64,000 bases of DNA from contig OZ281497.1 in assembly GCA_965637545.1 (NCBI GenBank), positions 5,022,001 to 5,086,000 of the forward strand. The letters run 5' to 3'. The translations under genes were made by a program, and so were the position numbers. Source of the DNA: Phallusia mammillata (lineage: Eukaryota). The notes beneath the pieces are model-generated. The model worked only from the letters and a program-made list of their open reading frames with translations, was not told the DNA's origin and ran no database searches. Below, in pieces: positions 1-63,721 of the stretch. The first letter of the stretch is position 1; each line of letters starts with the position of its first letter.

Positions 1-3000
1 GAAAGCCTGAAGAAGACCCTGATGTACTTTTGAAGGTAAACATTTTGCGGTTGTTTCTGTGTTTTTTATCTACACCAGTAAAGCTCAAAAGCTTTTGAAA
101 TAAATTTCGGGAGCTGCCTTGATAGAAAATAGATAAAAACAGGCCACACTTTCCTGCACATAGTTTAAGGCAGAGTTGTTAATGGGCCTGAAATTAGAGC
201 CCGATTCCGTCCCGTACCCAAAACCTGGCCCCAATCCGAATTGTTTTTTAGAAGCCTGTTTAGACCCTAAAGTTTGATTGACCGGCCTATACATTGAAGC
301 ACAAGGAAAAACCAAGACAACAAACACCATAGATAATAATATACAACTGGTCTTGAACAAGGCATTATTAGGGCTGATTGACATTAGGTCAGGTCCAGCA
401 ACTAGATCAGTGCTCTTCAACCTTTTTAGTGACACGGAACCCCCAAGGTGTTTTGTCAAACTTTGCGGAACCCCCATAGAATCATTTTGAATGAATGTAA
501 CTCAAGTAGGCTGAATCAAAGCAACATACATTTTTACGTAACACACCCCAAGCACATAACAAATGTTGACTTCAATTAAATTAAACGATTTACTGAAACG
601 CATTTCATGTTATTTAGATTGATCGTTTGTACATTTATCTCAGAATTCAAAGAGAGATTATCAAGACTTTGATTATTACATCACAATTGATCAATGGTGT
701 AACCAAGGTTAACTAGATTGTACAGCCCTTTCAGGGTTCCGCGAAGCAAATCTAGTTAACCAAGGTTAACTAGATTGCATTGCTGTTCGCAACAATGATA
801 TTATGAATCATTTATGTTTGAATTGCTACACATAAGCTCTGCGAACCCCTGTGCGACCCTTAAAGTTCGCGGAACCCCTGAAAGGGCTGTACGGAACCCC
901 AGGGTTCCGCGGAACCCCGGTTGGGAACCACTGAACTAGATACTTAGCTAGTTAAGCTTATTCTATAAAATACTGACACAGAGTATAAAGTCAGGGCCAA
1001 ATTAGGCCCAATTTTTTTAAGAAATCTAAGCCCAACCCTGGCCCGACTTACAACTTTGGTTTGAGCATCACTGATCTCAAGCATGGTCCAAGACTAAGAT
1101 TTGCCTTGCTGCATCAGCAAAACAATTTTGAACTCAAACTTGTTTATTTTTTAGGAAAGAGGCCACCGTGAAAAGTCAGAAAGAAAACACAGGTGGGTGC
1201 AAGTTTCTCTGCAAGAAAAAAATAATTGGTGCAAATAAAATACAGTAACTGCGTTTTTCTTTCATGTAGATCTGATGACTATGATGCAGAAAAGGTAAGT
1301 CTTGTTTGCTGCTTTCCATTTGACAAGTAAAAAAATCTAAAGCTTTTATAATAATATCTTATATAAAATACCTTCCATAAAAAAATAGATTAATGGCGAA
1401 AATAATAGCTCAAATAGACGTAAAAAGCGCCATGCTTTATTGCTCACATGTTTTGGCAAATGCTCATGACTCCAGTGTATATAAACGGGTGTAACTGATG
1501 GCCTTCATATCACTGATGATGGCATGAGTATTTGCCGAAACGTTTGAATAATAAAGCATGCCGCTTTTTGTGTCTATTCGGGCCGTTATTTTCACCGTTA
1601 AACTTATGAACAGATCCGTATATAGTGTTTAAAAAATAGCTTATCTAAAAATATGCATAATTTGTCTCAGGAAAGACGCAAAAGAGAGAAAAAAGAAGAA
1701 AGAAGGCGAAGGTAAGCCTATGAACTTATAGTTAATTATGATGAGTAATTTGTTTGTGAAAATATTAAAATAATGCACATTATAAGTAAGCTGCAGATAG
1801 TGCAAACTCTTTTGGCATATAATGGCTCATAGATGCAGCTTGTGATATACAATTGACCATATTTTGGCTAATGTAGCCACACTATAGCACTCCAGTTTGT
1901 TGAAAGTAATGCAATTTGTAATGCAAGGCATGATATTTTTGACATGAAAAGTGAAAATAGATCTGTTTCTTCTTTTTCAGACACGAACAGCAAGAGGAAG
2001 AAGAAAGGGTAAAATCTTGGTGTTTAAAAGTAGCAGTTTATCGATTTTTAGCTCAAAAATCATTTACTTCTCAACACTGTTTTTCATGGTCACAAAAAAA
2101 TAAAAACAATGGCATTTTTCTATGGTTTTAGAGAAGAGAAAAACGAAAACACAAAAAGGAACATGAAGCAAGTAATGGGGACAGGTATGTTAAAAACCAA
2201 CAACTTTGTTTTGTGTTTACTTGTTATGCCACTGGTTCTTAACCTTTTTAGTGTAATTTCCCACTAAAGTCAATTACCGAGTTTAAACTTTTTTTTAGTT
2301 TCAACCCGATTTTGGTGATTTTTATGATGATGTTTTGTGTCGTACATTAGCAATGATGTTCTTCAATCAATGAAATATATTCGGCTTGTGACCAAACAAT
2401 CATATTTAAAACATAGCCAAGTGAAACTAAAGGCATGATATACTTATTTGATATTCGAGTAAAGCTTTATACAACAATTTAGGTACTATTGACTTATGCA
2501 TTTTTTCTCTGCATGTATTTTCTCACCTGTTGAGAACCACTGTGTTACCAAATGACAAAAATAACTGGTTACAACTCTTTGTTTGCAGAAACCGGGAAAA
2601 AGAAGCCACGACAAAAGTAAGTGATTATCCTTTCAAATTTGCAACATTGCTATTTACAAACAGAAGACAGTGCACATTGTTTTGGCCTATAATGTCTCAT
2701 CAGCGCAGCTGGTGACGAGATATTGGCCGTATTGGCTAGTGTAGGCATAATGGATCGAAACAGTGTGCACTGTCGGCAGCTTATCATTTATTGGCTCTAT
2801 GCTTTTACACTATTTTCAAAACTTGTAAATTGTTGCATTATTTTATAGAGCAGTCGTTCCAAAAGTAAACCCACAGATGAAGAAACTTACAGGTAAACTA
2901 ATGATTTTTTTACCCCACTTTTTACAAGATTACAAAGCCTTTTATATATTTCAGTGCACCAACGCAAGAAAATGAAGATGGGGTAAGTTTTTTATTTATT

Positions 3001-30500: not shown

Positions 30501-31309
30501 GTTTTTCGTTGTTGGACTTTCACCACTACAACCTGTATACGAAAGAGTAAGTTGTCAATGTATGATTTGGATTCCTTTTGTCATGGGTTAAATATCCATT
30601 GCATTTAAAAGTTTACTTTGGCTAAAAGGTTCTTGACCAAATATGGTGCTTCTTTCACGAGTAAATTGCATAACCGAACTATGGTCACATCGCAAAACAA
30701 CAGGGCTCAAACCTTTTCTACAAATGTTGAATATTTCAGTATTATCAAATGAGCAATTACGCTTTGTTACATATAAATTGCAATTATCCGCTATTCCCTG
30801 AAGCGTCTATGCTACCAGAATGTTTCTTTTAAATGGCTTTTGTTAATAGGGACTTACTGCCCACAACTTAAAATCGATTCTGCATTTTACTTCATCTGTC
30901 ATCTTGGAAGTAGGTCTAGATTTTAGCCCCAGTGATCATAATATGTATAATCTACGCTCATTTTATTACGCTGTTCAAATGCACTAATAGAGAGCTAAGA
31001 GAATATATATTCATTACTGGGATAAGCACTACAGCAGTTCGACATCACGCCTTTTTAACAGGCGCGGCGTACAATGTTCCGCGTTCATTTGTAGACCTAA
31101 GCTTCGGAATCTCAAGAACACATTCTTAAAACAAACGATTTTTACAATCTTTTCGCCGTTTCTTAATATGTTACATGTAAATTGGCAAACAAACATTGGA
31201 AAGGAAATCGCCAAAGCACGTGATAGTGAAACATATGCATCATATAATATGGGTCTGTCTCTAATTTGGAGTCACTAATTCTGCACAGTGGGTATATAGG
31301 CAAAAACAG

Positions 31310-32430
31310 TTATGCTTGCCATTTCGCAAACAAATATACAACACCAACAGTAATTATTGTTGTATGTGGTGAAGCATGGAAAGGTGAATAAGTTGACCTT
31401 GCATTTATTGAACCGTGTTCGTAATTTGTCGTTGGTGTCAAATTGACTGTAAAATGTAACAGACAAGATATTTGATTGTGTTACTGCCATTTTGCACCAA
31501 AACATGCAAACTGTAGGCCTATGTGCTAGCTAGACTGCTGACACATTTTAATAAACTAAACAGTTCTATTAGAAGTCCTTATTCCAATACTATATATTTA
31601 TAAAACCAACCTGGAAGTGATGGTGACGTAATTGTTGCGACTGTAACAAGAGTAATGACGTGTTAGTTCGTAAAAGGACATCTTTAATTTAGCGACAACA
31701 TCAAGTAAATTTTCTGCACTAACATTTTCGTATCCAGGAATTGTATTTTGCGACTCGTGTGTACCCCAGGATTTTTGGCTTGTGCACAATCTCTTCCAAA
31801 AGACGTCCTATCAGGAACCACGTGCTTTCGCCGATAAAACGCACAAGTGGTCCACCTGAGTCGCCCTGTAAAATACTGTTTATTTGAATTCTTTATTGTC
31901 AAGCTGCACCTGCAGAGTTTTTAAAGATGACTCGTCACAGATGGTAGGGCCCCTTCGACGAGTTACACCAACATTACCCACCCCGGTCGTGTTATACTCA
32001 CAGTGCGCCAAACTTCCGCCAAATAACCCTTTATCAAATGGTGTAGCTCCTGCGCGTTCGGTCGTGACCCACCAACTGTTTCACCCACTATTTTGCCCTC
32101 CATAGCGTTTTAACGTTGGGCAGCTATTTCCGGCTTGTAAATGACTTAGTACAAGTGTGTAGCCTGCGTATTCTATTCTATTATCAAGCGAAATAAATTA
32201 GACTGAACATTGTGACAGGAAATAAGGCAAACCAAGATCAACTCATAAATAGTTGAATCGCATAAAACATATTCCTACCAATTGCCAACTATTCTGTATT
32301 CTGGTTTACCTGGCACGAGTCCACCCCTCCCTTCTTATTATCCCCAGCGCAAATTTGAGTTTCCGATATAGCACTGTAGGACTTTCGGCAAACGTCTTGG
32401 TCGACAATTGGAACTCTGACTTGGTGTATT
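31310..32430 (-). pseudogene. Truncated trypsin-like protease pseudogene (3' exons only; paralogue of 38874-43212)
   Basis: Exon ASNHDMP*AIHQVRVP...GGVDSCQ has TCA>TAA. The GDSGGP exon has a small deletion relative to the paralogue's GVTSFG that shifts the frame. No CUB, LDLa, His or Asp exons are found upstream before the shared promoter block at ~33150. Confidence 0.85.
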
Positions 32431-32516
32431 GCTTACGGCATGTCGTGATTGCTTGCTACAAAATAATCAAAAGTTTTTGCTACCCTTGTAAAAGCTTCAA
32501 GCGAGTAAATGATAAC

Positions 32517-32564
32517 CTGCAGACAGTGCACACTGTTTCGACCTATAGAGTCTCATCAGTGCAG
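32517..32564 (-). ncRNA. Complete type I hammerhead ribozyme (family B)
   Basis: Reverse strand CTGCA-CTGATGA-GAC tctatag GTC-GAAA-CAGTG tg CACTGTC-TGCAG: all core nucleotides, G10.1-C11.1 pair, full helix III, GUC site, 5-bp stem I. Confidence 0.85.
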
Positions 32565-33149
32565 CTGGTGACGGGAGATAGGCCGTATTGGTTTAGCCAT
32601 CCAACGGCACTCCTCTAGTTTGTGCCTAGTTGTGGATTAGAACAAAACAGATGAGGCATGGTTTTACAGCCCGTTTCTTCCAACAAGCTGGAGTGCCGTT
32701 TCGATGGCTAGCCAATACGGGCCATCTCGCATCACCAGCTGCACTAATAATACCGTATATGTCGAATCAGTTGGCACTACATGCTGCTTATGTCTTTACA
32801 CTTGTTTTTAATGAATACACAGAAACGCGATTTCGACAAATGTTAATAAAACATGCTAGTCAAATGGTTAGAAGTTCAGTACTTACATAATTTCCTTCGA
32901 CATGTTTAAAGTCGAATTTAGTACCGAATTCCAACATGAGATTGTCATTTACATTTTTTAAGGGGGCCACAGGTCCTACAGGGTTGTGTTGACCGATACA
33001 TACAGAATAGTTTGCAATTGGCAGGAATTTATGTTTTATGTGATTCAACTATTTAAGACTTGACCTTGGTTTGCCTGACACAATGTTGAGTTAAGTATAT
33101 TTCGCTTGAAGAATAGAATACACAGGCTATGCACTTGTACTGAATCATT

Positions 33150-33610
33150 CACAAGGCAATTTCCGTTCTATTTCTTCGCCCTTGACATAGAATAAAAGCT
33201 ATTTGAAAACGTTTCTTTGTCGAGTAGCTTTTGTGTGTATAGAACGCTTAAACTATTTACCAATCACCGCTTAGAAGTCTGTTTGTGGTTGATATTGCAG
33301 GTGTTGGATCAAAAAGTTTTGTATTGTACTTTGATTTGTGCGAAAATCAAGTTATGCGGCAAGTGGTAACACGTAAATAAATAACCCTCCGACCTTGTTA
33401 GCTTTGACATTGAATTAGTGGCTTCGAAAAATACAAATTACATTGCCACACGTTACTCCAAACAATAGCTGGACCAGGCTAATTTCTTTTGAACTTGTAG
33501 CAATTAAAGTCGACAACGTACCATACATGATCGAAACGTCAAACATGTATAGGCGGACTACAGTATTACTCATTTTATACATGGTATATCGTATAAACTA
33601 ATCGTGACAA
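33150..33610. promoter_or_regulatory. Candidate bidirectional promoter between head-to-head trypsin and CUB genes; twin at ~43500-43930
   Basis: Non-coding block strongly conserved between the duplicates and located between divergently oriented genes. Confidence 0.45.
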
Positions 33611-36600
33611 TGTTGAATTATCTAAGTTGGTGGTCTGGCGCCTTGTGCTCCACAAGTTGCCCGAAAACGTTGGTATTTTGTTTTGTTTATGGTTTAAACG
33701 ATACGATGCTATAGTTCCACGGTTAGTGTTACAAAGATATTAGTAAAAGAAAACTCCACAGAAAAAATAACCTGTTACTCATTTATGTTGCTCCTTCTGA
33801 ATCAAATAGACAAAACGTTTCAAAAATTACGAAGAAAGACATTCATTGTTGCAGTACGATACAAAAAAGTCCCCGTTTCCTTGACCTCATATAATTTTTG
33901 CGAAACTATTGCTTACCCGGTTCCGAAACGAGGTTTTGTTGACAGATACAGGTCTCACAAGAGTGGAGTGTAGTCAGTGAACCGCACCAGGTCCAAAAAT
34001 ATTATATCTCAGAACAAAGTTTATCAATTTTTTATGTTGCTCTGAATCTGAAAAACATTGCAGAAGAATGTCGCATGAATCATATTGGTTCTCTAACTCA
34101 AATAACCAGGCATATAGATAAAGTTATGCTTGAAAGGGTTTTATTAAACATTTCGCACCTGCACATTATTGTTTTTCTCTCAACGGCTCTGTGTGACTTT
34201 TCCAGTGTCCCGATAAACATTCTTATTGTTTACGTTGTAGGCGAATGTTTTGTGGCCCGTTCCGCCATCGCCGATCAATGACCTTCAAAACCTCAAGGTC
34301 GCCATTAAGAACATGGGTGAAACAGCTGGTGACGTCGGTTTTCACACGTATATCCCCGATTCCGCTGAAATGACTTCATTTACTATGCACACGGAAGGAG
34401 TTGCTTACAAAGGAATGAAAACTGACCGCAAGGGAGCGCAGGAGATGCTCGATAAAGCAATAAAGGGCGATCACGTGGCTGTTATGCATTCCTCGAAACG
34501 TCTAACAGGTGAACTGCAATTTCGTAGTATTGCAGGTTTGCAGTAAAATACGGTTATAGTTTCATTTCAACTTCAATTGCTAGTCAGTGCAATGCTGTTG
34601 CTGCGCTTTTTGCAACCATGCGAAATGGACCGAACTATTCAAATAAAGACACTGCAACAAGGCAACTTTATACTAAAACCTTAATAGGCAACAAATAGGC
34701 CCATGGGTGCCGGTACGTAAAGGCAAGAGGAGGCACAAAGTCAGTGAATGACCAAACTAGCGTGTCTGCTTTATACAGTAAACGTTTTTATATGTTGTTG
34801 CCGTAATCTCTGCCGTTTTGCTGTATTTAGAACAAACAAACTGGTGCACGTGATAAGAATGATACGGCTTTTAGGCAACGTAGTCGCACTGAATATAACT
34901 TGCGCCCATATTTACGTAGTTACAAGATATCGTAATCCATCCATATAAGTATGTATGCGTCAAACCTAGCCTCCTCTTAAATAAGGTGTTGCTGCCTGGA
35001 TAATATCAAGTTTGTAGAGCTCTTCTGGAAAATGAAATTTTATTCCGACGTTTCGACGTCCCATACGGGTCGTCTTCATCAGGGTAAATAACACTGAATG
35101 CGACTAGAGTTTATCGTGGACTGCCTATTCTTGCTAAATTTTGTGCCGGTGCCCACGAATAGGGTTTATTATGTCGATGTACATGAATCACAGGTTAATC
35201 CAGTTGTAAGACATCACTTAAATCCAAACACCAATTTTTGTAACTTACTTTTAGCTTATCTTTGTGCCAAACTTTTGCAGAAACCTTCGTCACACAACTG
35301 CAATCGGCAAAAAACACGATCCACATCAAAAGTAACACCGAGATTGCCTTTAACATCGAGTACAAAATAACCGTGCCAGACGTGACCGACTCCGATGTGA
35401 AGATACAAAACAGGGCCCAGGTGGTATTTGATCTTTACGGCTCCACTGTTCAGGATTTGGTGGGTGAGATATTTTCTCCCAACTATCCTCAACCTTATCC
35501 AAACTCTGCTGACATCGCGTGGCTAATTCGTGTGCCTGAGGATAAAATAGTGCAACTTAATATCGTTGACATAGATATCGAGGAATGCTGCGACCGACTT
35601 ACCATCTATGACGGTAACTCTGTTGATGGACCAGTTATTGACATTATATCGGGTTCATTGACCAATTCGAATAGCTTTTACCGTTCCACTGAAAATAGTA
35701 TGTGTTTACATTTTACTTCTGACCTTTCAGGGTCAAAAAATGGATTCAAAGCTACTGTTTCTTATGATGTAAGATTTACTGCTGACCTGTACCCAAAAAC
35801 ATTCTCTTATGTACCAGAAAAACCAAAAGTTTCCAATTATAATGCTTTAAATTGTTCTGCCACAGAGGATCTATACCCTGAATCGTGTGCTTTATATACT
35901 TTAGCTTCACCCAATTATCCCAGTCAGTATTTCAACGACATTGACTGCTGGTGGTACATCCGCCTCCCTTATCAAGAAAACCTAATAGTCTCCTTGGAGA
36001 TTACCTACCTCGACTTGGAAACAAACTACGATTATCTCCGTTTATACGACAGTAGTTTATTGCTTGCTGAATTAACTGGAACGACTTATTCACCAGACCC
36101 ATATATTGCAGTCGTTTATATGTCTGTTAACTTTGTAACCGACAAATCAGTAACAAAAGGCGGCTTTTTTGTGCAGTATGAAGCACTACCTTCACCCCAA
36201 TGCAACGAAACTCAACATCTGATTGCTTACGCTCCTTCCGCCCGCTATCTACAATCACCAAACTACCCATTTTATTACTATAATATGCTACATTGCACAT
36301 GGAGTATATATACTCAATCTACAGATTTGGTGGTGCGATTATTTGCATCTGGGATCGACCTTGGAAATTTTGAAGATAATTTATTGTTTTTAGATGGTCC
36401 TTCGTACTACTCCCCACAAATTCCGTATCCGTCTCAATTTCTGCTTTCGACAGGCTCCTACATGTTTGTAGTATTTAATTCTGACGACAGTACTCCAGGC
36501 AAGGGGTTCAGTCTTGCGTATATATCTGTATACCGGTACCAACTAATTAATGAAAACAACGCAATAGCTGCCTGCTACGACGCACATTACATGGACATTA

Positions 36601-37277
36601 ATCCATATTTTTACCTTTACATATCGTTGAATTACCCCGGCATGTACGATAGCAATATGTCTTGTAGTTGGAAAATTCAAACAATGTATCCAGGATACGG
36701 TATTGAGTTACAACTAAACGATGCCCGCTTTGGCCAAGGCGATGGTATCGTTGTGTACGACAGTTGGGATTCAACTTCTTCTGCTGTTATATCTGTGTAT
36801 TCAAACACCCCTAACCGTTTCTTTGTCAACTCCAGGCAGATTACCATAACCTTTACTTCTGACGCAAATTACAACGATTACGGCTTTTTGATCTTATTAA
36901 AAGCCGCACCAATGAACCCTGCCTGTAACTATGGAGTTGAAACTCTTGACATTTATGATGTACCAACCTATCTTACGTCACCAAACTACCCAAGCGGATT
37001 GTATTCCCTACAAGTGTGTACTTGGACCATACACGCGCACAGTGGAGATTACATAATGCTTACTGTGCACGACCTTAGTGTTAATGCTTACGACCATGTT
37101 ATGTTTTGGGATGGCTCGTCTACAGCGGACCCTTTCTTGGCAGAGTACTATCAAAATTCCTATGAGTCTCCTTTGTATTCTACTGGCAACTATATGACAG
37201 TCCAGTTTGTTACCATGCACAGTCTTTACTCTGGTTTAGGTTTTCGATTTCTACTAACTCCCCAAACTACTGGATGA
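33610..37277 (+). CDS. Extracellular protein with an unrecognised N-terminal region plus five tandem CUB domains; CUB part is one ~2 kb exon (35281-37277)
   Basis: The 671-aa ORF has five SPNYP/SLNYP...C.W.I...D....YD...F.SD....GF units. Upstream exons inferred from in-phase GT/AG sites at 33610-33672, ~33945-34120 and 34240-34509. CUB call is strong; the 5' model is tentative. Confidence 0.8.
35040..35091 (-). ncRNA. Minimal type I hammerhead motif (family A)
   Basis: Reverse strand TTATTTACC-CTGATGA-A-GACG a CCC gtat GGG a CGTC-GAAA-CGTC-GGAATAA; GUC triplet and extended stem II. Confidence 0.75.
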
Positions 37278-38873: not shown

Positions 38874-43212
<4,339 letters not shown>

Positions 43213-43949: not shown

Positions 43950-46900
43950 TTTTTATCTAATAAGTTGGTTGTCTGGCGCCTCGTGCTCGACAAGTTGCCC
44001 GAAAACGTTGGTATTTTGTTTTGTTTATGCGGTACGATGCTATAGTTCCACGGTTAGTGTTACAGAGATACTGGTAAAAGGAAACTCCACAGAAAAAAAC
44101 AACCAGTTTCTCACTTATTTTGCTCCTTATGAATCAAAAAGACAAAACCTTTCAAAAATTACGAAAAAAGCACTCATTTTTGCAGTACGATACAAAAAAG
44201 CAAGTAAAACAGCAGTTTCCTTGCACCTTATATATTTTTTGTGAAACTATTGCTTACCCGGTTCGGAAACAAGATTTTGTTGGCCAATACAGGTCCAATA
44301 CACTCACAAGAGTGAAGTGTAGCCGGTGAACCGTACCAGGTTCAAAATATTAAATCTCAGAACAAATTTCAGTAAGAACAAATCAATTGATTAATATTGC
44401 TTTGATTCCGAAAAAAACATTGCAGCAGAATGTCGCGTGAATCGTATTGGTTCTCTAATACAAATAACCAGGCATCTAGATAAAGTTAGGAAATATTTTG
44501 CACCTGCACATGTTGTCTTTCTCTCAACGGCCCTGTGTGACTTGTGCAGTTTCCTGAAGCATTCTTATTGTTTACATTGTAGGCGAATGTTTTGTGGCCC
44601 GTTCCGCCATCGCCGATCAATGACCTTCAAAACCTTAAGAACTTTGGTGAAACAATTAATGATGTCGGTTTTCACACGTATATCCCTGATTCCGCTGAGA
44701 TGATGTATTTTACTCTGCACACGGAACGAGTTGCGTACAATGGAATGAAAACTGACCTCAAGGGGATGCAGGAGTTGCTCTGTAATGCGATAAAGGGCGA
44801 CCACGTGGCTGTTATGCATTCCTCAAAACGTTTACCAGGTAAAATGCAATTTCGTAATACTACATATTTTTAATAAGATACTACCATTATTTATCATCAA
44901 CCTGAGGTAAATTACACAAAACGCAGTAAAGCAGTGAGCATTTTAAGGCAGCGCAGCGAAGGTGCAGTTGCAGATCGTTTAACCTTGATCCACCAATTGT
45001 GACCTCTGCTGCAATACATTCCAAAGATATGTAGCTATTTTGTTGCTCAGACGCTATTCAATGCAATGCTGATCCTTCGCTTTTCGCAGCCAAGCTAAAT
45101 GAAACTAACTTAACAAAAGCAGGCATTACATAAAATGTGTGCAAATACCTCAAACCGCAACAGCACATTAGTAAGTTAAAGTTGAACGCAACAACACACG
45201 TAGTAGGTTAAATCGTAGGATATCAGCTAAATCAAAACACTACTTAAACACTACAGGGCGACAACTTTAACCTACATGTTGTCTGTTTAAAATTAGACGA
45301 ACTTACTTTTAGCTTACCTTTGTTTCAAACTTTTTCAGAAACCTTCGTCACACAACCGCAAACGACAAAAAACACAATCCACATTAAAAGTAACACGGAG
45401 ATTGCCTTTAACGTCGAGTACAAAGTAACCGTGCCAGACCTGGTCGATTCCGATGTGAAGATACAAAACAGGGCCCAGGTGGTATTCGATCTTTGCGGCT
45501 CCTCTGTTCAGGATTTGGTTGGTGAGATCTTTTCTCCCAACTATCCTCAACCTTATCCGAACTCTGCTGACATCGCGCGGCTAATTCGTGTGCCTGATGA
45601 TAAAATAGTTCAACTTAATATCATTGACACAGATATCGAGGAATGCTGCGACCGACTTACCATCTATGACGGTAGCTCTGTTAATGGACCAGTTATTGCC
45701 GTTTTTTCGAGTTCATTGACTAATCAGAACAGTTTGTACCAGTCCACCGAAAATAGTATGTCTTTACATTTTACTTCTGACCTTTCAGGGTCAAAAAGTG
45801 GTTTTAAAGCGACTGTTTCTACTGTTGATGGTTTGACTGCTGACCTGTACCCAAAAACATTCTCTCATGTGCAAGAAAATCCAATAGTTTCCAATTATAA
45901 TGCTTTAAATTGTTCTGGCACAGAGGATCTATACCCCGAATCGTGTGCTTACTATTCTTTAGCTTCACCCAATTATCCTAGCCAGTATTTTAACGACATT
46001 GACTGCTGGTGGTACATTCGCCCCCCTTATCAAGAAAACCTGATAGTCTCCTTGGAGATTACCTACCTCGACTTGGAAACAAACTACGATTATCTCCGTT
46101 TATACGACAGTAGTTTATTACTTGCTGAATTAACTGGAACGACTTACTCCACTGAGTCATATATTGCTGTCGTTTATATGGCTGTTAACTTTGCGACCGA
46201 CAAATCAGTAACAAAAGGGGGCTTTCTTCTGCAGTACGGAGCATTGCCTTCACCACAGTGCAACGAAACTGAACAATTAGATGCCCACCCTACCTTTTAT
46301 CAAACAATCCAATCACCAAACTACCCATTTTATTACTATAATATGCTCTACTGTTCTTGGCGTATCTACTCGCCTTATTCTGGTTGGGTGATACAAGTAT
46401 CTTTAATTCAGCTTAACCTTGGAAATACGGAAGATAATTTGATGTTTTACGATGGCCATGACCAATTTTATCCACAGATACCTTATGGGTCTCCATCGAC
46501 TCCATATTTACGTTCGACTGGGCCATACATGTCGATTGTATTTACTACTGATGATAGTTTTCCGGGTACCGGCTTTATTCTTTCGTATGGGTTATTTGAC
46601 ACTTACAAACTGGTACGAGAAAATAACGCAATAGCTGCCTGTTACGACGCACAGTACATGGACATTGACCCTTATTCTTACCTTTACATATCGTCGATTA
46701 ATTACCCCGGTATGTACGATAGCAATTTATCTTGTACTTGGAAAATCCAAACAATGTATCCAGGACATGGTATTGAATTACAACTTAACGATGCCCGCTT
46801 TGGTCAAGGCGATGGTTTCGTTGTATACGACAGTTGGAATTCAACCTCTATCGTTATATCTGTGCATTCAAACACTCGTAACCGTTTCTTTGTCAACTCC

Positions 46901-47340
46901 AGGCAAATTACCATAACGTTTACTTCTGACGCAAATTACAACGATTACGGCTTTTTGATTTTGATGAAAGCCGCGCCAATGATCCCTGCCTGCTACGGAG
47001 TTGAAACTCTTGATATTTACGCTGATCCCACTTATCTAACATCACCTAACTACCCAAATGGGTTATACAACTACCAAGTGTGTACATGGACTATACACGG
47101 CCATACCGGAGATTACATAATGCTCACAGTGCACGACCTTTGGCTCGATGATAACGATAGTGTTTCTATCAGCGATGGACCTTCTACAACCGATCCTTCC
47201 TTGGCAGTGTTCTAACAAAATTACTTTGAGTTGCCCTTGTATTCTACTGGTCATTATATTACTTTGCAATTTTATTCCTTGCATAGTTTCTACCCGGGTT
47301 TAGGTTTTCGATTCCTATTCACTCCCCAATCTACTGGGTA
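43950..47340 (+). pseudogene. Second 5xCUB gene, probably disabled
   Basis: The 631-aa ORF 45320-47215 ends at TAT>TAA inside CUB5, and the rest of CUB5 continues to ~47340. The 5' exons lack the ATG of copy 1 and carry TGG>TGA (~44313) and a frameshift. Conserved CUB1 Trp is Arg. Confidence 0.7.
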
Positions 47341-48255: not shown

Positions 48256-51200
48256 CTAACAACACTGCATGATTGCTTGTCTAATATCATCATCTAGAAT
48301 GCAGTACAGCAGGAAGACAACGATTCCCTGCGATCCGTTTACCACAGTGTGGATGTACATCAACACCTCGTTGGAAATTTCGTTTCCGATTCCTGTAAAA
48401 AAGTGACATTTTTAGGCTTCTTGTGTCCGCCTTGACGTAAACCTACACTGAGTTGAGTTTATTTCGTTGGGTGAAACCATAGTCTTTACAAAAAAATCGG
48501 AAACGAAATTTATGTAAAGGCTATGGTGAAACAAATCGTAGCAGCACAATTGCGAAAATAGCTGCGCAACGTTGAGACGTTATTAAGTGCGCCAAAGCAG
48601 ATGGCACAATTGGTGGATGGATGGTAAACGCGCTGCAACTACACTGTTAAACTGCAACCCTACAGTTTGCATGTAGCCAAGATGTATATCACATACCTAA
48701 TGCGTAAACACAGTGAAATCAGAGCCTATGTCGCGCTACAGCAAGCCAACTAAAAATTTCGTTTTTTGAACTTTGGGACACAATTCTTTTTTCCCCATTC
48801 CGGTAGACAGTTCGTTAACAGAAGAAACTTGCCAAGTCCAGTCATAAACTGAAATATTCCATGGAAACACACTTTAAACTCTTATCTCAATATTGTTGTC
48901 TCCAATTTCTTGGTAGAGCTACTAACATAAGAACTCACAATAGACAAAATTTGCTAAATATCAGTAGATGTCGTATAGAGCAGTGGTTCTCAACCGCCGG
49001 TCCGTGGACCGGCACCGGTCCGCGTCAACGTTTCGTCCGGTCCGCCAAATATATTACAATTTTATATCTCATTTGCAAAATGCAAGATGTTGAAGGCAGA
49101 GAAATCGTGTGGAAGTCAACGCTCTACTTCGCCTTGCAGAAACTTCATTAGAACCGCGTTTAACACGCATGATATCAAACAGACAGCAGTAAACTTCCCA
49201 TTTAATTGAATTTTTCATACTTTTTTGATCTGCATATTTTTGTCGTGATGACATTTTGGGTTGATTTTGATAGTGCACCGGTCCGCAAAATTATTTTTGA
49301 AAGTTTACCGGTCCGCAAACTTAAAAGGTTGAGAACCACTGGTATAGAGCGCAGTAATTTTTATTAACAGTGAGACTACATGGTACGGTTAGAAACATAT
49401 TTTTATTCGTTCTTGCTCTTTGCGCCACCTAACGGTTAGCAAACTTGTCTGGTGTGATTTTTATGTTAGTAGATTTTCTCAATTTCTTACCTATGAAGAA
49501 ACCAAATGCCCACGTTCCTCCAAGCATGAAAAATAGAACGAAAAATGATTTTGCTGCTTTCAACGCGTCTTCTTCATCGGGGGACTCTCCTCTGTTCCGC
49601 ATCTTTCTGGAGTGGTACATGACACGAGTCGTCTTCAAAACGATGAAGAAATTGACAAGTAGGGCAAGGCCGAGAGGTGCTATGTTGGAGGCGTAGAAAA
49701 TAGGAGTGCCCGGTGCCATCCAGCACCTGTCATACTTAGAAATAAGTGATGTTTGGTTTAGAACAGTTTGACACTGTTCGTATAATGGTTGAACTTTCAT
49801 GTACAAGCCCTGAGAAAAGCCCACACCCGCAGCAATGCCCACTATCAGAAGCGGAAGGACCCAGCCAATCAAAACGAAGATCTTGTAACGATTGTCGGCG
49901 TCCTGGGTTTGAAAGAAATATGGAAAGGAAGTTGCCATTAGCAGACGGGTGCCTTCCACAAGAAACCACATTCCTAAAATGTAAGCTGATTTATGCCAAA
50001 GGTTTATACAACATACAAGGTTATAGGCAGGGTTGCCATACCGTCTCTATTTCTAAGATATGTCCTTATTTTTCAGAGCAATGTCTTAAAAAAATTTTGG
50101 GTCCTGATTTCTAAGAAATGTCCTTGTTTTTGACTCGAGTCCTTAGTTTGTCTTATTTTCAACATTTACAAGTATAATCCCTGCTACAAGCAAAAGTAAA
50201 CCAAGACCTGAGCTGTCATGAGATGTATACAAAGCATTTTCTACGCAAGGAGTAGCTGGAAGTTAAAACAGATAGTTTTGGGCAAAAAAACGTCGAAAAC
50301 TGCTGGAAGAGCAATACTCGTTTATATATAATTATGATGTTATAGAAACAATTCATGAACCTGTAGACAGCAATAGGTAGTGGTTGATCAGGGCAAGCAT
50401 CATGCATGGAATCTCGTCAATAACTGCAAGATCATGTGCTACGTTGAACGTGTGAAGAAGGAGAAGTGCCACTGACAGATTGATTTGAACTTTAACCCGA
50501 TCACGGTCTCCTCCAGCCCAGCGAAGGATTGCTATAGTAACCACCAATGTCAGAATAGATACGATTTCCGTCGCATACGCAGTGATCTAAAATAACAAAA
50601 GTAGGTAAGAAAGAGGAATTTTTTTCATAAGACACTTCCCAAGTACCGTTACTGTATCATTCGACAAAGTTTGTGTTTTGTATACGTAGCTTAAATCGAG
50701 TAAGAAATTGAGTGTCCCGTGAACCCTGGTCTTCATGAACGCTTCAGGCCTGATCTCAGTTAAGAAGTTATGTTCATCTTAACTGATTACTGGTCAACCT
50801 GGCGATCCTCTAGTACGAAGCTGACATGTGCAGCATACAAGGCAAGCAACAGTGCTTGTGATTCAACTTTTGACGTATTCACCACTGAGCTTGCGTAGCT
50901 CAGTTTATAGAGCGCAAGCACAAGGATGGCTCCTGTTGTGGGTTCGAATCCCAACGCAGGCTAAACTTTTCCATCCCACGCCTTGTCATATGCGAGTGCT
51001 TGATGCCCGCTGATTTGGTAAAAAGCATTCGATGGACCTGATTATGAATACAAAATCCGATCGAGTTTTGAATACCTTACATCTATGGTGTTTGTACGTA
51101 AAAAGTTTGATACTAAAGAAAAATAAGTTAATTGAGTGTTCGAAACAGACAAAATCTTCACAATCAGAGGTTTACCTTTACACCCATGGGTAGAATTACA

Positions 51201-52365
51201 GTGGTCGCCGCAAGAAGAACGGTGAAAATGGTGAGATGGTTGCATTTGCAGGAAACTTTGCCTTTTGAGTCAACAGCGCTGGTGCATCCTTCGTTAGAAT
51301 ACTTCAGTGTTTTTCTATCGAAGAAAACGCAGGCTGGATCTAGTTTGCCTGAGCTTAACGAGCCCTTTGCGTTCTTGTTTGCTTTTTCAATGACCATACA
51401 GCCTGGTCCCAGGGACATAGGTGGGACTTCGAAGCTGATGGTGCCTGAAAGTCTTTTAGCTCCACCCCATGCGTTGCCAGAAGAGGACTTGAAGCTATCA
51501 GCATTCCAGCCATCAATTACAAGAAAAGTTGTATCTTCCGTAGCTATGTATTTTTTCATCATCAGTGAGCTTGGTTCAACTGGTTCATCTTGGGCTTGTT
51601 CTGTTACATTGAGACTGAACGCGTACGCTGATGCCACAAGGCGGTTAGCGCCATTGGGTTGCAAGGTTAGGTTAACATTGGTTGGTCCTAGTTGGATTGA
51701 TGTGTTGTAAATATCCTGGGATACGTTTGTAACTTCAATAAACAGATGACCGCTTCTGGAGTTTTGAATGACTTGGTTCTCATCCGAAACCACACGAGAG
51801 ACGTTCATGAGCAAATTTTCGATTTGCTGCAAATCCTTTAGGTCAGAAGGCTTTCGGTTTCCTTGTAGGGTTTGAAGCTCCGGTAGTGGATAAACTGTTT
51901 AAAATACAAAGAGAAAATCAATATTTGTGCTGTCTAACCCAGGTTGTGAAACTCGTTTAGTACTCTGGCCTTGAATTTACTTTTGACAAAAATCAAAATG
52001 CAATTAAGTCTTGAAGTTGCGTTGTTGCATCACAACAAGGGTAGTTTGTTAAACTCTTAGGATTGTCATTAAGTTGTACAGTTTTGGCAATCTCCATAAT
52101 TTTTATTTTTTAGAGTATTAATGGAAAAAAATCTTTGTCGCTTCGAGGGGCCTATTAAACAGACGTGAGGCAAGCACACGTTTACGGTTGAAAATCGTTC
52201 AACTTTCTTAGTCAACGCTGATATATTTATATACTTACTCACAAGCTGTCAAACTTTTGACAAACTGTCAAACAGTTGTACGTACCGTGCCCTACGATAT
52301 GACATGGTTGAGTTTGATGGACTACGATATGCATGGTTGCCAATATCAGAACGAATCTCCCTCGT
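48256..52365 (-). CDS. Adhesion GPCR (GAIN/GPS + secretin-like 7TM), copy 1; start codon exon not located
   Basis: CVFFD...GC...CKCNHL/TIFTVLL GPS; TM segments ...KVQINLSVALLLLH...CMMLALINHYLLLSTGMWFLVEG...IGWVLPLLIV...RCWM...AAKSFFVLFFMLGGTWAFGFF...NGSQGIVVFLLYCILDDDIRQAIMQCC*. Five exons in phase. Confidence 0.9.
48981..49341. mobile_element. hAT-type MITE in last GPCR intron
   Basis: TIR CAGTGGTTCTCAACC; perfect 8-bp TSD GTATAGAG; absent at the homologous site (~56115-56135) of GPCR copy 2. Confidence 0.92.
50028..50300. repeat. CAGGGTTGCCA-headed repeat; further copies at 56777-57070 and reverse at ~61750-62029
   Basis: Shared CAGGGTTGCCATACC...TTTCTAAGA...TGTCCTTATTTT blocks. Confidence 0.75.
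50888..50962 (+). mobile_element. tRNA-derived SINE head or tRNA pseudogene in GPCR intron; twin at 57652-57726, relative on - strand at ~23085-23150
   Basis: TAGCTCAGTTTATAGAGC (A box/D arm), GGTTCGAATCC (B box/T arm) and a pairing acceptor stem, but no proper anticodon stem. Confidence 0.7.
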
Positions 52366-55466: not shown

Positions 55467-58400
55467 CTAGCAACACTGCGTGATTGCTTGTCTAATATCC
55501 TCATCTAGAATGCAGTACAGCAAGAAGACGACTATTCCCTGCGATCCGTTTACTACTGTGTGGATGTACATCAACACTTCGTTGGAAATTTCGTTTCCGA
55601 TTCCTGTAAAAATAATCATTTTTAAGCTTTTTGTTCACCTTGATGTAAACCCACACTGAGTTGAGTTTATTTCGCCGGGTACAACAAATCGTAGCAGCAC
55701 AATTACGCTAAAATATTCACCAGGCCGGAAATAGCTGCGCAACGTTGAGGCGTTACAAAGCGCGACAACGTTCGGCGCTCAATTGGTGGATGGATGGGAA
55801 ACGCGCTGCAGCTACACCGTTAAACTGCGTCCCTACAGTTTGCATGTAGCCAACATGTAATACATATACCTAATGCGTCAATACAGTAAAATGTCGCGCT
55901 ACAGCAAGTAAGTGCCTAATTAACTTTTGGTCACAATTTTTTGTTTCCGATTTCGGTTTGACAGATCGTTAGATGAAAGAAAGCCGCCAAAGACATAAAA
56001 TGGAATATTCTCATAGAAACACACCTCAAAGTTTTTTTCAATATTGTCAGCTCCAATTTATTGGTAGAGCTACTAACCTAAGAACTCACAACAGACAAAG
56101 TTTCCTAAATACCGATAGATGGCGCATATAGCACAGTAATTAACATTGAGTCTATGATGGTGTTTGAAAAAAACTCGTTTTTTAGCAAAATTGTCAGGTG
56201 TAAGTTTTTATGTTAGTAGATTTGTCAAATTTCATACCTATAAAGAAACCAAATGCCCACGTTCCTCCAAGCATGTAAAATAGAACAAAAAATGATTTTG
56301 CTGCTTTCAACGCGTCTTCTTCATCGGGAGCCTCTCCTCTGTTCCGCATCTTTCTGGAGTGGTACATGACACGAGTCGTCTTCAAAACGATGAAGAAATT
56401 GACAAGTAGGGCTAGGCTGAGTGGTGCTATGTTGGAGGCGTACAAAATAGGAGTGCCCGGTGCCATCCAGCACCTGTCATACTTAGAAATAAGAGATGTT
56501 TGGTTTAGAACAGTTTGACACTGCTCGTATAATGGCTGAACTTTCATGTACAAGCCCTGAGAAAAGCCCACACCCGCAGCCATGCCCACTATCAGAAGCG
56601 GAAGGACCCAGCCAATCAAAACGAAGATCTTGTAACGATTGCCGGCGTCCTGGGTTTGAAAGAAATATGGAAAGGAAGTTGCCATTAGCAGACGGGTGCC
56701 TTCCACAAGAAACCACATTCCTAAAATGTAAGCTGATTTATGCCAAAGGTTTATACAAAATATATGGTTATAGGCAGGGTTGCCATACCGTCTCTATTTC
56801 TAAGATATGTCCTTATTTTTCAGAGCAATGTCTTAGAAAAACTTGTCCTGATTTCTAAGAAATGTCCTTGTTTTTGACTCGAGTCCTTAGTTTGTCTTAT
56901 TTTCAACATTTACAAGTCAAATCCCTGCTACAAGTAAAAGTAAACCAAGACCTGAGCTGTCATGAGATGTATATAAAGCATTTTCTCCAAACAAGGAGTA
57001 GCTGGAAGTTAAAACAGATAGTTTTTGGCAAAAAATCGTCGAAAACTGCTGGAAGGACGGCAAAACGTCGAAAACTGCTGGAAGAGCAATACTCGTTTAT
57101 ATATAATTATGATGTTATAGAAACAATTCATGAACCTGTAGACAGCAATAGGTAGTGGTTGATCACGGCAAGCATCATGCATGAAATCTCGTCAATAACT
57201 GCAAGATCATGTGCTACGTTGAACGTGTGAAGAAGGAGAAGTGCCACTGACAGATTGATTTGAACTTTAACCCGATCACGGTCTCCTCCAGCCCAGCGAA
57301 GGATTACTATGGTAACCACCAATGTCAGAATAGATACGATTTCCGTCGCATACGCAGTGATCTAAAATAAAAAAGTGGGTAAGGAAAAGAGCAAATTTTT
57401 TCATAAGACACTTCCCAAGTACCGTTACTGTGTCATTCGATAAAGATTTATGTTTTGTATACGTAGCTTAAATCGAGTACGAAATTGAGTGTCTTGTGAA
57501 CCCTGGCCTGCATGAACGCTTGAGGCCTGATCCCAGTTATGAAGTTAAGATTACTGGTCAACCTGGCGATCCTCTACTACGAAACTGACATGTGCAGCAT
57601 ACGAGACAAGCAACAGTGCTTGTGATTCAACGTTTGACGTATTCACCACTGAGCCTGTGTAGCTCAGTTTATAGAGCACAAGCACAAGGATGGCTCCTGT
57701 CGTGGGTTCGAATCCCAACGCAGGATAAACTTTTTCATCCCACGCCTTGTCATACGGGAATGCTTGCTGCCCGCTGATTTGGTAAAAAGCATTCAAAAGG
57801 CCTGATTATGAGTACAAAATCCGATCGAGTTTTGAATGCCTTACATCTATGGTGTTTGTACGTAAAAAGTTTGATACTAAAGAAAAATAAGTTAATTGAG
57901 TGTTCGAAACAGACAAAATCTTCACAATCAGAGGTTTACCTTTACACCCATGGGTAGAATTACAGTGGTCGCCGCAAGAAGAACGGTGAAAATGGTGAGA
58001 TGGTTGCATTTGCAGGAAATTTTGCCTTTTGCATCAACAGCGCTGGTGCATCCTTCGTTAGAATACTTCAGTGTATTTCTATCGAAGAAAACGCAGACTG
58101 GATCTAGTTTGCCTGAGCTTAACGAGCCCTTTGCGTTCTTGTTTGCCTTTTCAATGACCATACAGCCTGGTCCCAGGGACATAGGTGGGACTTCGAAGCT
58201 GATGGTGCCTGAAAGTCTTTTAGCTCCACCCCATGCGTTGCCAGAAGAGGACTTGAAGCTATCAGCATTCCAGCCATCAATTACAAGAAAAGTTGTATCT
58301 TCCGTAGCTATGTATTTTTTCATCATCAGTGAGCTTGGTTCAACTGGTTCATCTTGGGCTTGTTCTGTTACATTGAGACTGAACGCGTACGCTGATGCCA

Positions 58401-59114
58401 CAAGGCGGTTAGCGCCATTTGGTTGCAAGGTTAGGTTAACATTGGTTGGTCCTAGTTGGATTGATGTGTTGTAATGATCAAGAGATACTTGTGTGACTTC
58501 AATGAAGAGATGACCGCTTCTGGAGTCTTGAATGACTTGGTTCTCATCCGAAACCACACGAGAGACGTTCATAAGGAGGTTTTCGAGTTGCAGCAAACCC
58601 TTCGGGTCAGAAGGCTTAAGGGTTTCTTGCAGCTTTTGGAGCACCCGTAATTGAACTGTTCAAATTACAAAAGCGAAATCAATGTTTTCGTATATAAATG
58701 TCTAACTCACTGTTTAAAATACAAAGACAAAATCAGTATTTTCTCATAATTGTCTAATCCAGGGTGTCAAATCGGTATAGTACCCTGGCCTTGAATTTTC
58801 TTTTGACAAAAATCAAAATGAAATTAAGCTATGAAGTTGCGTTGTTATACATCATACCACGGGTAATTTGCAAAACTTTATCGCTCAAGGATAGGCCAAA
58901 TAGATCAGGGCTTGAAAACCGTTAACATTAATTTCTAGTTGACACTCGATTTTTTAGCATTTAAATTGTGTATAAATGTTAAACTGTTATTTCCACAATC
59001 TTAAACCTAAATGAGCCAGCTAATAAATACGTACCGTCTAACACCAGATGGCATGGTTGGGTTTGAGGGATTCCGATGAACATGGTTGCCAAGATCAAGA
59101 TAAATCTCCCGCTT
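55467..59114 (-). CDS. Adhesion GPCR, copy 2 (near-identical paralogue)
   Basis: Same exon structure and GPS (CKCNHLTIFTVLL); ends ILDEDIRQAITQCC*. Confidence 0.9.
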
Positions 59115-62743: not shown

Positions 62744-63721
62744 TCAAATAAAAAATTCATCTTCATGGCTTCGCATATGATATTTTTTTTGTTCTGGATA
62801 GCGAAATGCCCTTTTACAAATCTCACATTTATACTTTTTTATGTTAGTATGAATGACTCTGTGTTTTAAAACATAGTCTCGTTTTGCAAATTTTTTACCA
62901 CAAACATCACAATCGTATTTTTTAGTTTCCAAGTGAAGATACATGTGACCCATTAAATATCTGCGCTTCTTGAAAGTTTTTCCACAGATGTCACATTTAG
63001 ATGGTTCTAAGTGAAGAATCTTTGCAGGTTTGTTTGTCTTTTGTTGTGTTGGCACTTTATTCATGTCTTCCGCTTTTTCAGTCCTTTTGTAATGATTCAA
63101 CATATGTCTCTTCATGTTCCCGGAGAGTGAAAAACGCTTTTCACAAATACTGCATTTAAATTTTTTTATTTTGTTATGGGTATACATGTGGTCACGTTTG
63201 TTTGAAAGTTGTGAAAATCTTTTATTGCAGATTTCACACTCATGTGGCTTTTCTCCAGTGTGAAGTAGCAAATGTTTACGCAATCCACTATTATGTGCAA
63301 ATAACTTTTCACAATGTTTGCACTTGTAGCGTTTTATTCCACTGTGTGTTAGCATATGGCGCTTTCTGGATGGTGGAGTTTTAAAAGACTTTTCACAAAA
63401 TTCACACTTGTATGGACGTTCATCAGTGTGTACAAAGGAGTGTAATGTCAGTTGTGCTCTTCGTTTGAAGACCTTATCACAGATTTCACATTTGTGAGAT
63501 GTTTTTCTACCATGGACTACTAGAGAGTGTTGGATAACTCCTTTCTTTTTTGCAAATGATCTATCACAAATCTCACATTTAAACATATTTTTTTCAGTTG
63601 AATCGATTGCATGTAAGTCTTTTGTCAGAAAATATTTAGTTGTATTGTCTATATTTAGCCTTTTAAGAATCACTCGAGGTTCCGGATAAGCTGCCATGGC
63701 TACCATTGTATTGCACAGCAA
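62744..63721 (-). CDS. C2H2 zinc-finger protein, 9 fingers in a 6+3 arrangement, single exon visible
   Basis: Nine CxxC-x12-Hxxx(x)H units with TDERPY/SGIKRY/TGEKPH linkers. True start uncertain (ORF opens at TTG; ATGs follow). Confidence 0.9.
   Translation of the reverse strand: MLCNTMVAMAAYPEPRVILKRLNIDNTTKYFLTKDLHAIDSTEKNMFKCEICDRSFAKKKGVIQHSLVVHGRKTSHKCEICDKVFKRRAQLTLHSFVHTDERPYKCEFCEKSFKTPPSRKRHMLTHSGIKRYKCKHCEKLFAHNSGLRKHLLLHTGEKPHECEICNKRFSQLSNKRDHMYTHNKIKKFKCSICEKRFSLSGNMKRHMLNHYKRTEKAEDMNKVPTQQKTNKPAKILHLEPSKCDICGKTFKKRRYLMGHMYLHLETKKYDCDVCGKKFAKRDYVLKHRVIHTNIKKYKCEICKRAFRYPEQKKYHMRSHEDEFFI

What the first reader, a model, noticed from the sequence alone, without database searches (positions are those of the whole stretch)
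32517..32564. Textbook-complete hammerhead ribozyme sitting sense-strand in the dead trypsin copy
On the - strand, the trypsin transcript strand, the intron reads CTGCA-CTGATGA-GACTCTATAGGTC-GAAA-CAGTGTGCACTGTC-TGCAG. Seen in sequence: every conserved core nucleotide, three closable helices and a GUC site. Established: this is the type I hammerhead consensus, and such motifs occur in animal Penelope-like elements and retrozymes. Inference: it should self-cleave as a monomer.
Basis: partly seen in the sequence, partly recalled or inferred. Interest (0 to 1): 0.8.

Follow-up and report, generated by a model that had tools for sequence, protein, structure and literature searches.

The report
Repeat-borne hammerhead ribozyme relic, masked
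The hammerhead ribozyme motif is real and sequence-complete, but it belongs to a very abundant small jumping element of a known kind, and at this site an inverted second copy just upstream should keep it from folding, so it is an ordinary relic.

Summary
Observation confirmed. Window 32517-32564 (- strand) carries every conserved hammerhead core nucleotide, with closable helices of 5, 4 and 5 bp and a GUC cleavage site. A strict descriptor finds it once in the window, against 0.01 hits per shuffled window. It lies sense-strand in intron 32456-32886 of a trypsin pseudogene.

It is not a stand-alone ribozyme gene. It is the 3'-proximal module of a dispersed repeat: four more copies lie in this window, and DNA contig depth over it is several thousand-fold above the flanks. 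Here the repeat forms a head-to-head inverted pair (arms 32512-32591 and 32712-32791), the known insertion pattern of Penelope-like retroelements and their non-autonomous relatives. The partner arm carries a decayed hammerhead on the + strand.

In the sense transcript the complementary arm is made first. The intron's lowest-energy fold pairs 38 of the 48 ribozyme nucleotides with it. Forcing the hammerhead fold costs about 36 kcal/mol, and predicted helix probabilities are 0. "Should self-cleave as a monomer" is plausible only for a short excised transcript in vitro.

No Rfam model reaches its gathering score. No RNA evidence of transcription or cleavage was obtainable. This scan has noted the same element many times elsewhere in this genome. 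Known kind, low interest.

The parts
32517..32564 (-). Complete type I hammerhead motif: helix I 32560-32564 with 32517-32521; CUGAUGA 32553-32559; helix II hairpin 32540-32552; GAA 32537-32539; helix III 32523-32536; C17 at 32522. Predicted cleavage is between 32522 and 32521.
   Evidence: Sequence read. Single strict-descriptor hit, 0.01 expected. Weak sub-threshold Rfam hammerhead hits.
32739..32786 (+). Decayed inverted partner hammerhead on the + strand. Its core reads CUAAUAA and GAAU, so G5, G8 and A14 are lost. Its complement on the - strand is the antisense mask of the intact motif.
   Evidence: Alignment A1, inverted repeat I1, and the pairing partners of each hammerhead nucleotide in the intron's lowest-energy fold.
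32504..32800 (.). Foldback insertion made of two copies of the repeat unit joined head to head with their 3' ends (hammerhead plus short tail) outward. Arms are 32512-32591 and 32712-32791 (78% complementary) with 120 nt between them.
   Evidence: I1; the 301-nt fold is -150.1 kcal/mol, z = -12.3. Self-match.
32456..32886 (-). Intron of the trypsin pseudogene that holds the foldback, with GTAAGT at 32886-32881 and AG at 32457-32456.
   Evidence: Sequence and comparison with the paralog's exon ends. Use of these splice sites was not shown.
32310..32455 (-). Trypsin-domain exom downstream of the intron, carrying an in-frame TAA at 32433-32435.
   Evidence: Translation. Pfam PF00089, 25.7 bits, profile positions 139-177. 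The paralog has a serine codon at the stop position.
31684..31902 (-). Last trypsin exon of the dead copy. The GDSGGP segment, the SFGRDCAQ segment and the C-terminal segment lie in different frames.
   Evidence: Three-frame translation compared with the intact paralog exon near 39662.
40462..40660 (.). Paralogous foldback in the same intron of the intact trypsin copy. The sense (-) arm hammerhead has G12 changed to A and lacks 13 nt of helix III and helix I. The + arm hammerhead has an A.C at the base of helix II and an unpaired helix I.
2665..2809 (.). Independent foldback copy of the same family. The - arm has AAAA in place of GAAA. The + arm starts inside helix II.
1787..1909 (-). Single (not inverted) decayed copy of the same family.
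41779..41850 (-). Single copy of the same family with an internal deletion that removes the helix I 5' strand and most of CUGAUGA.

Best explanation
The motif is the hammerhead module of a short, very abundant, non-coding retroelement of the Penelope-like / animal-retrozyme kind. The element inserted into a trypsin intron before the gene was duplicated. It inserted as two copies joined head to head, which fits reverse transcription primed on both cut DNA strands so that both 3' ends, each with a hammerhead, face outward. One arm has kept the family's ribozyme sequence almost unchanged and the other has decayed. At this locus the motif has no role. In a sense transcript the complementary arm is transcribed first and pairs with the ribozyme as it emerges, locking it in a stem of about 130 bp, so appreciable self-cleavage is not expected. 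Shown here: the motif, its repeat membership, the inverted-pair anatomy, the pseudogene state and the predicted energetics. Inferred: mobilisation by a Penelope-like enzyme, and lack of cleavage in vivo.
For: The motif is complete and non-random. Family membership has two supports. Four other copies lie in the window. In two DNA runs the summed contig depth over 32404-32637 is several thousand-fold that of the flanks, with about 1,800 and 3,500 contigs laid. Within the hammerhead, the only listed place where most family contigs differ from this copy is 32549, which is C-G in the family and U.G here. Other copies show opposite-strand joints at different internal points (table 5) and single-arm copies exist. 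That fits variable head-to-head retro-insertions and does not fit a fixed terminal-inverted-repeat transposon. [quoted passage not shown] For sequestration, 38 of 48 nucleotides pair with 32739-32784, enforcing the hammerhead costs about 36 kcal/mol, and helix probabilities are 0. The insertion predates the duplication because both paralogs carry it in the same intron. Survival of one intact arm among about eight in the window fits neutral decay at the roughly 22% paralog divergence.
Against: No reverse transcriptase or GIY-YIG reading frame was found in this window: the ten frames scanned (two trypsin exon pieces and eight of the 13 ORFs of at least 130 aa) gave none, and five of those ORFs were not scanned. 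The autonomous partner is therefore not identified here. No target-site duplication could be recognised. The copies here are not in tandem, so the retrozyme definition is not met at this locus. Nearest-neighbour energies ignore hammerhead tertiary contacts, helicases and proteins, and a Penelope-like protein was reported to assist hammerhead cleavage (PMC11167929). The two arms differ unexpectedly in decay, with about 3 against 13 changes in 48 nt, and I cannot fully explain that. All runs were stored as contigs, so RNA ends at the cleavage site could not be examined.
Confidence: 0.82

Rival explanations
1. One reading: the motif is an active monomeric self-cleaving ribozyme that cuts the pseudogene's pre-mRNA at the GUC site.
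For: All core nucleotides and three helices are present. Helix III has 5 bp with a tetraloop, longer than the 1-2 bp typical of animal type I hammerheads that need dimers (PMC4209133, PMC7229834), so a monomer is structurally possible.
Against: The upstream complementary arm is predicted to sequester 38 of 48 nucleotides, including all of CUGAUGA and GAA, at a cost of about 36 kcal/mol. The isolated 48-mer and the 101-nt context also disfavour the hammerhead fold. Helix I has only 5 bp here, whereas 5 of 6 other in-window arms carry a C at the next position, which would add a pair. No loop-loop tertiary contact is recognisable. No RNA contig covers the unique flanks of the locus in the two likely-RNA runs laid, X3 and X4.
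Confidence: 0.1
2. The foldback is a miniature inverted-repeat DNA transposon that happens to carry hammerhead-like ends, not a retro-insertion.
For: It is a compact palindromic element with outward-facing similar ends. No poly(A) tail and no coding capacity are present.
Against: Foldback lengths and inner junctions differ between copies: 297, 199 and 145 bp, with one arm starting inside helix II. Single-arm copies exist. Inverted joints lie at varied positions in other genomic copies. No target duplication was seen.
Confidence: 0.05
3. The long hairpin is the functional unit, for example a small-RNA precursor, and the hammerhead is incidental.
For: The fold is very stable at -150 kcal/mol with z = -12. 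Sub-threshold matches to plant microRNA precursor models reflect the hairpin shape.
Against: The microRNA model scores are far below their cut-offs (40 against 500, 32 against 200). The hairpin is fully explained by the inverted insertion. The paralog has lost about 100 nt of it. No small-RNA data were available.
Confidence: 0.02
4. The motif is a chance match to the hammerhead consensus.
For: Rfam gives no match at gathering score.
Against: Expectation is 0.01 per window. The same motif recurs, in decayed forms, in homologous repeat copies and in hundreds of family contigs.
Confidence: 0.01

Closest known systems
Hammerheads of Penelope-like elements and their non-autonomous derivatives (Cervera and de la Pena 2014, PMC4209133; Craig et al. 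2021, PMC8557442; Mob DNA 2024, PMC11167929)
   Same: The hammerhead lies near the 3' end or terminal repeat of a dispersed retroelement. Insertions often form an inverted pair. Copy number in an invertebrate genome is massive. There is no poly(A) tail. The ribozyme's role is unclear, and it was not needed for insertion in vitro.
   Different: No reverse transcriptase or endonuclease reading frame is present here, and the unit is short and non-coding. Most Penelope-like hammerheads are minimal, with a long helix II and little or no helix III. This one has a canonical 4-bp helix II and a 5-bp helix III. The minimal type is present separately in the window at 35007-35099 and 4117-4208.
Animal non-LTR retrozymes (Cervera and de la Pena 2020, PMC7229834; Li, Clavereau and Pollet 2026, bioRxiv 10.64898/2026.07.22.740005)
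   Same: Both are short, non-coding, AT-rich repeats that carry a canonical type I hammerhead with a helix I of about 6 bp and a helix II of 4 bp. Both are thought to be mobilised by Penelope-like enzymes.
   Different: Retrozymes are defined by head-to-tail tandem units whose hammerheads release circular RNAs. The copies seen here are inverted pairs or singles, not tandems. Copy ends do not coincide with the cleavage site. No circular RNA was examined.
Satellite and SINE-borne animal hammerheads (newt satellite 2, Schistosoma Sm-alpha)
   Same: A type I hammerhead embedded in a highly repeated short element, with a partly palindromic helix III region that could also pair between two molecules.
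   Different: Those have a 1-2 bp helix III and work as dimers from tandem transcripts. This one has a helix III that could stand alone.

Membership tests
Hammerhead ribozyme, type I | Conserved core: C3 U4 G5 A6 N7 G8 A9, G12 A13 A14, A15.1-U16.1, and a non-G at position 17 | tested here: met
   Exact match on the - strand at 32517-32564.
Hammerhead ribozyme, type I | Three helices around the core, with helix I open-ended and helices II and III closed by loops | tested here: met
   Helices of 5, 4 (one U.G) and 5 bp, with loops of 5 and 4 nt (descriptor; the structure scores -9.4 kcal/mol).
Hammerhead ribozyme, type I | Match to the curated Rfam hammerhead covariance models at gathering score | tested here: not met
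   No match at gathering score. Best scores are 22.9 bits against 56.3 and 19.2 bits against 48.5.
Hammerhead ribozyme, type I | Tertiary contacts between loop 2 and a loop or bulge in helix I, needed for fast cleavage at cellular Mg2+ | tested here: inconclusive
   Helix I ends after 5 bp here and after 6-7 bp in most sister copies. I could not recognise a closing stem or loop 1 by inspection.
Hammerhead ribozyme, type I | The hammerhead fold is accessible in the natural transcript | tested here: not met
   Helix probabilities are 0 in the 301-nt and 431-nt contexts, with a penalty of about 36 kcal/mol. This is a thermodynamic prediction only.
Hammerhead ribozyme, type I | Site-specific self-cleavage that leaves a 5'-OH and a 2',3'-cyclic phosphate | not testable with these tools
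   All available runs are stored as contigs, which cannot show RNA ends.
Penelope-like element (autonomous) | A reading frame with a telomerase-like reverse transcriptase and a GIY-YIG endonuclease | tested here: not met
   No such domain in the ten reading frames scanned against Pfam: two trypsin exon pieces and eight of the 13 ORFs of at least 130 aa. Five of those 13 were not scanned. The repeat unit is short and non-coding.
Penelope-like insertion architecture | Inverted or partial-tandem copies with 3' ends outward and variable inner junctions | tested here: met
   Foldbacks of 297, 199 and 145 bp with unequal arms. Opposite-strand joints at varied positions in other genomic copies. The criterion is taken from PMC8557442.
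Animal non-LTR retrozyme | Head-to-tail tandem repeats, each unit with a type I hammerhead | tested here: not met
   No direct tandem of the unit at this locus or elsewhere in the window.
Animal non-LTR retrozyme | Expression as unit-length linear and circular RNA | not testable with these tools
   Only contigs were available. Likely-RNA runs hold family copies inside contigs of about 2 kb (records 19 and 29), which says nothing about circles.

The most novel reading that the evidence does not exclude
The difference between the paralogs (sense-strand hammerhead intact in the dead trypsin copy, broken in the expressed copy) reflects selection against cleavage-competent sense hammerheads in introns of working genes. 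This would imply that such relics do cleave often enough in vivo to matter despite the antisense mask.
Probability: 0.05. Interest if true: 0.45.

Novelty: new member of a known kind. Interest (0 to 1): 0.15.

Why it matters
It adds one more well-preserved copy to a hammerhead-bearing repeat family that is already plentiful in this genome, and the general kind has been described since 2014. Its small value is as a worked example. A sequence-perfect ribozyme motif can be catalytically irrelevant because the insertion mechanism places an antisense copy beside it. Genome-wide counts of "intact" hammerheads therefore overstate the number that can act. The pair of paralogous insertions also gives a dated natural decay series for the motif.

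Tried and rejected
- **Rfam at gathering score over the whole window:** nothing.
- **Rfam in E-value mode:** only sub-threshold hammerhead hits, plus plant microRNA-precursor hits that merely reflect the hairpin shape. I rejected the microRNA hits as not meaningful.
- **RNA evidence:** the single run search found no run on record as RNA that holds the locus. Laying two DNA runs and two likely-RNA runs gave contigs only. There were no start or end pile-ups and no coverage of the unique flanks in the likely-RNA runs, so this neither supports nor excludes transcription.
- **Target-site duplication:** I looked by eye at the flanks of the 32504-32800, 40462-40660 and 2665-2809 copies and found none convincing.
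- **Autonomous partner:** I looked for one among the window's long reading frames and found none in the eight scanned; five of the 13 ORFs of at least 130 aa were not scanned.
- **Selection on the intact arm:** rejected as unnecessary. About 3 changes in 48 nt is within expectation at the paralog divergence. The odd arm is the partner, with 13 changes.
- **Organism name:** not verified. Run names are coded, and earlier scan notes call the genome an ascidian.

Full report

Yes. In standard hammerhead numbering the parts are:
- helix I 5' strand, 32560-32564
- C3-A9 (CUGAUGA), 32553-32559
- helix II hairpin, 32540-32552, with pairs G10.1-C11.1, A-U, C-G and U.G and a 5-nt loop
- G12 A13 A14, 32537-32539
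- helix III, 32523-32536, with A15.1-U16.1 plus four pairs and a GUGC loop
- C17 at 32522
- helix I 3' strand, 32517-32521

Cleavage would fall between 32522 and 32521.

I wrote a strict descriptor requiring an exact core, at least 4, 3 and 3 pairs in the three helices, and a non-G at position 17. It finds this site and no other on either strand of the 64-kb window. Three hundred second-order-Markov shuffles gave 0.01 hits per window.

The curated models do not endorse it. Rfam finds nothing at gathering score. In E-value mode the best hammerhead scores are 22.9 bits against a cut-off of 56.3, and 19.2 bits against 48.5. By descriptor it is a hammerhead. By Rfam's thresholds it is not called.

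**2. Where does it sit?**

- The exon just downstream on the - strand (32310-32455) matches Pfam Trypsin (PF00089, 25.7 bits).
- That exon carries an in-frame TAA at 32433-32435. The paralog at 40303-40416 has a serine codon at that position.
- In the last exon (31684-31902) the GDSGGP stretch, the following stretch and the C-terminus lie in different reading frames. The paralog's last exon near 39662 is continuous.
- The exon upstream of the intron has lost the GWG motif that the paralog keeps.

The host is therefore a trypsin pseudogene on the - strand. The motif lies sense-strand in intron 32456-32886.

**3. What is the motif part of?**

It is not isolated. It occupies one arm of an inverted repeat (32512-32591 against 32712-32791, 78% complementary, 120 nt apart). 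The 301-nt stretch folds into one long hairpin of -150.1 kcal/mol, with z = -12.3 against shuffles.

The other arm, read on the + strand, is a decayed copy of the same hammerhead. Its core is CUAAUAA and GAAU, so G5, G8 and A14 are lost.

The same sequence recurs in the window:
- a foldback at 2665-2809
- a single copy at 1787-1909
- a single, internally deleted copy at 41779-41850
- a foldback at 40462-40660, in the same intron of the intact paralogous trypsin gene

The two paralogous regions are about 76-79% identical overall, so the insertion predates the gene duplication.

I laid contigs of two DNA runs of the same organism on 31000-34500 at 90% likeness. Summed depth over 32404-32637 was several thousand-fold that of the unique flanks, from roughly 1,800 and 3,500 contigs. 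That summed depth is not a copy number, but it shows a very abundant repeat.

Inside the hammerhead, the only place listed where most family contigs differ from this copy is 32549. There the family has C-G and this copy has U.G in helix II, so pairing is kept. In 5 of 6 other in-window arms the base after the helix I 3' strand is C, which would add a sixth pair that this copy lacks. This arm is therefore close to the family's majority ribozyme, with two small weakenings.

**4. What kind of element is it?**

The copies have constant outer ends (hammerhead plus a short conserved tail) and variable interiors. The foldbacks measure 297, 199 and 145 bp. One arm of the 2665-2809 copy begins inside helix II. 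Other genomic copies show opposite-strand joints at different internal positions (table 5). Single-arm copies also exist.

This is the published insertion pattern of Penelope-like elements:
- Hammerheads lie in their terminal repeats (PMC4209133).
- A purified Penelope-like protein cleaves and extends both DNA strands (PMC11167929), which would explain two outward-facing 3' ends.
- Canonical animal type I hammerheads belong to short non-coding retrozymes (PMC7229834).
- Those retrozymes have recently been argued to be non-autonomous derivatives of Penelope-like terminal repeats (bioRxiv 10.64898/2026.07.22.740005).

The ten reading frames I scanned against Pfam (two trypsin exon pieces and eight of the 13 ORFs of at least 130 aa) hold no reverse transcriptase or GIY-YIG endonuclease. 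The unit is non-coding and the copies are not tandem. I therefore file it as a non-autonomous, Penelope-mobilised, retrozyme-like repeat. It is not an autonomous element and not a retrozyme in the strict tandem sense. I could not recognise target-site duplications.

**5. Would it cleave here?**

In the sense transcript the complementary arm (32791 to 32712) is transcribed before the ribozyme arm.
- In the lowest-energy fold of the whole intron, 38 of the 48 hammerhead nucleotides pair with 32739-32784. These include all of CUGAUGA and G12-A14.
- With the hammerhead fold enforced, the ensemble free energy rises from -153.8 to -117.8 kcal/mol in the 301-nt context. In the whole intron it rises from -176.6 to -142.0.
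- The mean pair probabilities of helices I, II and III are 0 in both contexts.
- Even alone, the 48-mer prefers a fold in which the helix I 5' strand plus C3-G5 pairs with the 5' half of helix III (-12.8 against -9.4 kcal/mol).

These are nearest-neighbour predictions. They ignore tertiary contacts, proteins and helicases.

In the motif's favour, helix III has 5 bp, against the 1-2 bp of most animal type I hammerheads that need dimers (PMC4209133, PMC7229834). A short excised transcript might therefore cleave as a monomer at high Mg2+. I could not test this. The + strand transcript would carry only the dead partner.

**6. RNA evidence**

No run on record as RNA holds the locus. The two likely-RNA runs laid contain family copies inside contigs of about 2 kb but nothing on the unique flanks. 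Contigs cannot show RNA ends. Transcription and cleavage at this locus remain untested.

**7. Is the intact state meaningful?**

With about 22% divergence between paralogs, about five changes per 48 nt per lineage are expected. This arm has about three, which is unremarkable. One intact arm among about eight in the window fits neutral decay.

The unexplained item is the partner arm, which has 13 changes. It lies on the more diverged, rearranged side of the pseudogene.

A separate scan note on this window proposes that ribozyme state tracks gene state. With one paralog pair and a masked motif, I give that about 5%.

**8. Comparison and verdict**

The closest known systems are the hammerheads of Penelope-like elements and animal non-LTR retrozymes. 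The differences are the canonical (not minimal) helix II and III architecture relative to most Penelope-like hammerheads, and the inverted rather than tandem arrangement relative to retrozymes.

The scan's own notes show that the same fold-back hammerhead elements were reported many times elsewhere in this genome. One was read by an earlier agent as a head-to-head Penelope-type insertion. My analysis of this locus reaches the same reading from the window, the reads and the papers.

The verdict is a new member of a known kind, of low interest.

Noticed in passing
window 35007-35099 (-), 4117-4208 (+), with fragments at 4019-4052 and 59352-59383: A second, unrelated hammerhead repeat family of the minimal Penelope type. 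It has CUGAUGA, a helix II of about 8 bp, then GAAAC-GUC with essentially no helix III (palindromic ACGU), the form proposed to act as a dimer. The two long copies are 82% identical.
   Followed up: partly
window 32134-32299 and 33000-33155: About 165 bp of the intron downstream of the trypsin exon is present again, inverted (81-91% complementary), upstream of the hammerhead intron. It sits where the intact paralog has the exon encoding the GWG region. This is a local inverted duplication or rearrangement that helps explain why this copy is dead.
   Followed up: partly
window 32712-32791 compared with 32512-32591: The two arms of the same foldback differ strongly in decay, with about 13 against about 3 changes in the 48-nt hammerhead. 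Equal age would predict similar decay. Possible causes are gene conversion of one arm, different source copies, or a regional rate difference near the rearrangement.
   Followed up: partly
window 2700 region, 40490 region and 1810 region (- strand copies): Three decayed copies carry the same G12-to-A change (GAAA to AAAA). C11.1-G12 is a CpG in this family, so the key catalytic G looks like a mutation hotspot.
   Followed up: no
window 35262-37277 (+) and 45320-47215 (+): Two large single-exon reading frames, each with five CUB domains (Pfam E-values 1e-67 and 5e-59), lie next to the two trypsin copies. This fits a duplicated protease/CUB gene pair. Further on there are two GPS-motif exons (51164-51832, 57928-58644), a secretin-family 7TM exon (49429-49971) and a C2H2 zinc-finger frame (62744-63721).
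   Followed up: partly
window 32896-32990 and 31936-32169: Two other stretches near the locus also show very high summed contig depth in the DNA runs and appear in the likely-RNA runs, so they belong to other abundant repeat families. I did not identify them.
   Followed up: no
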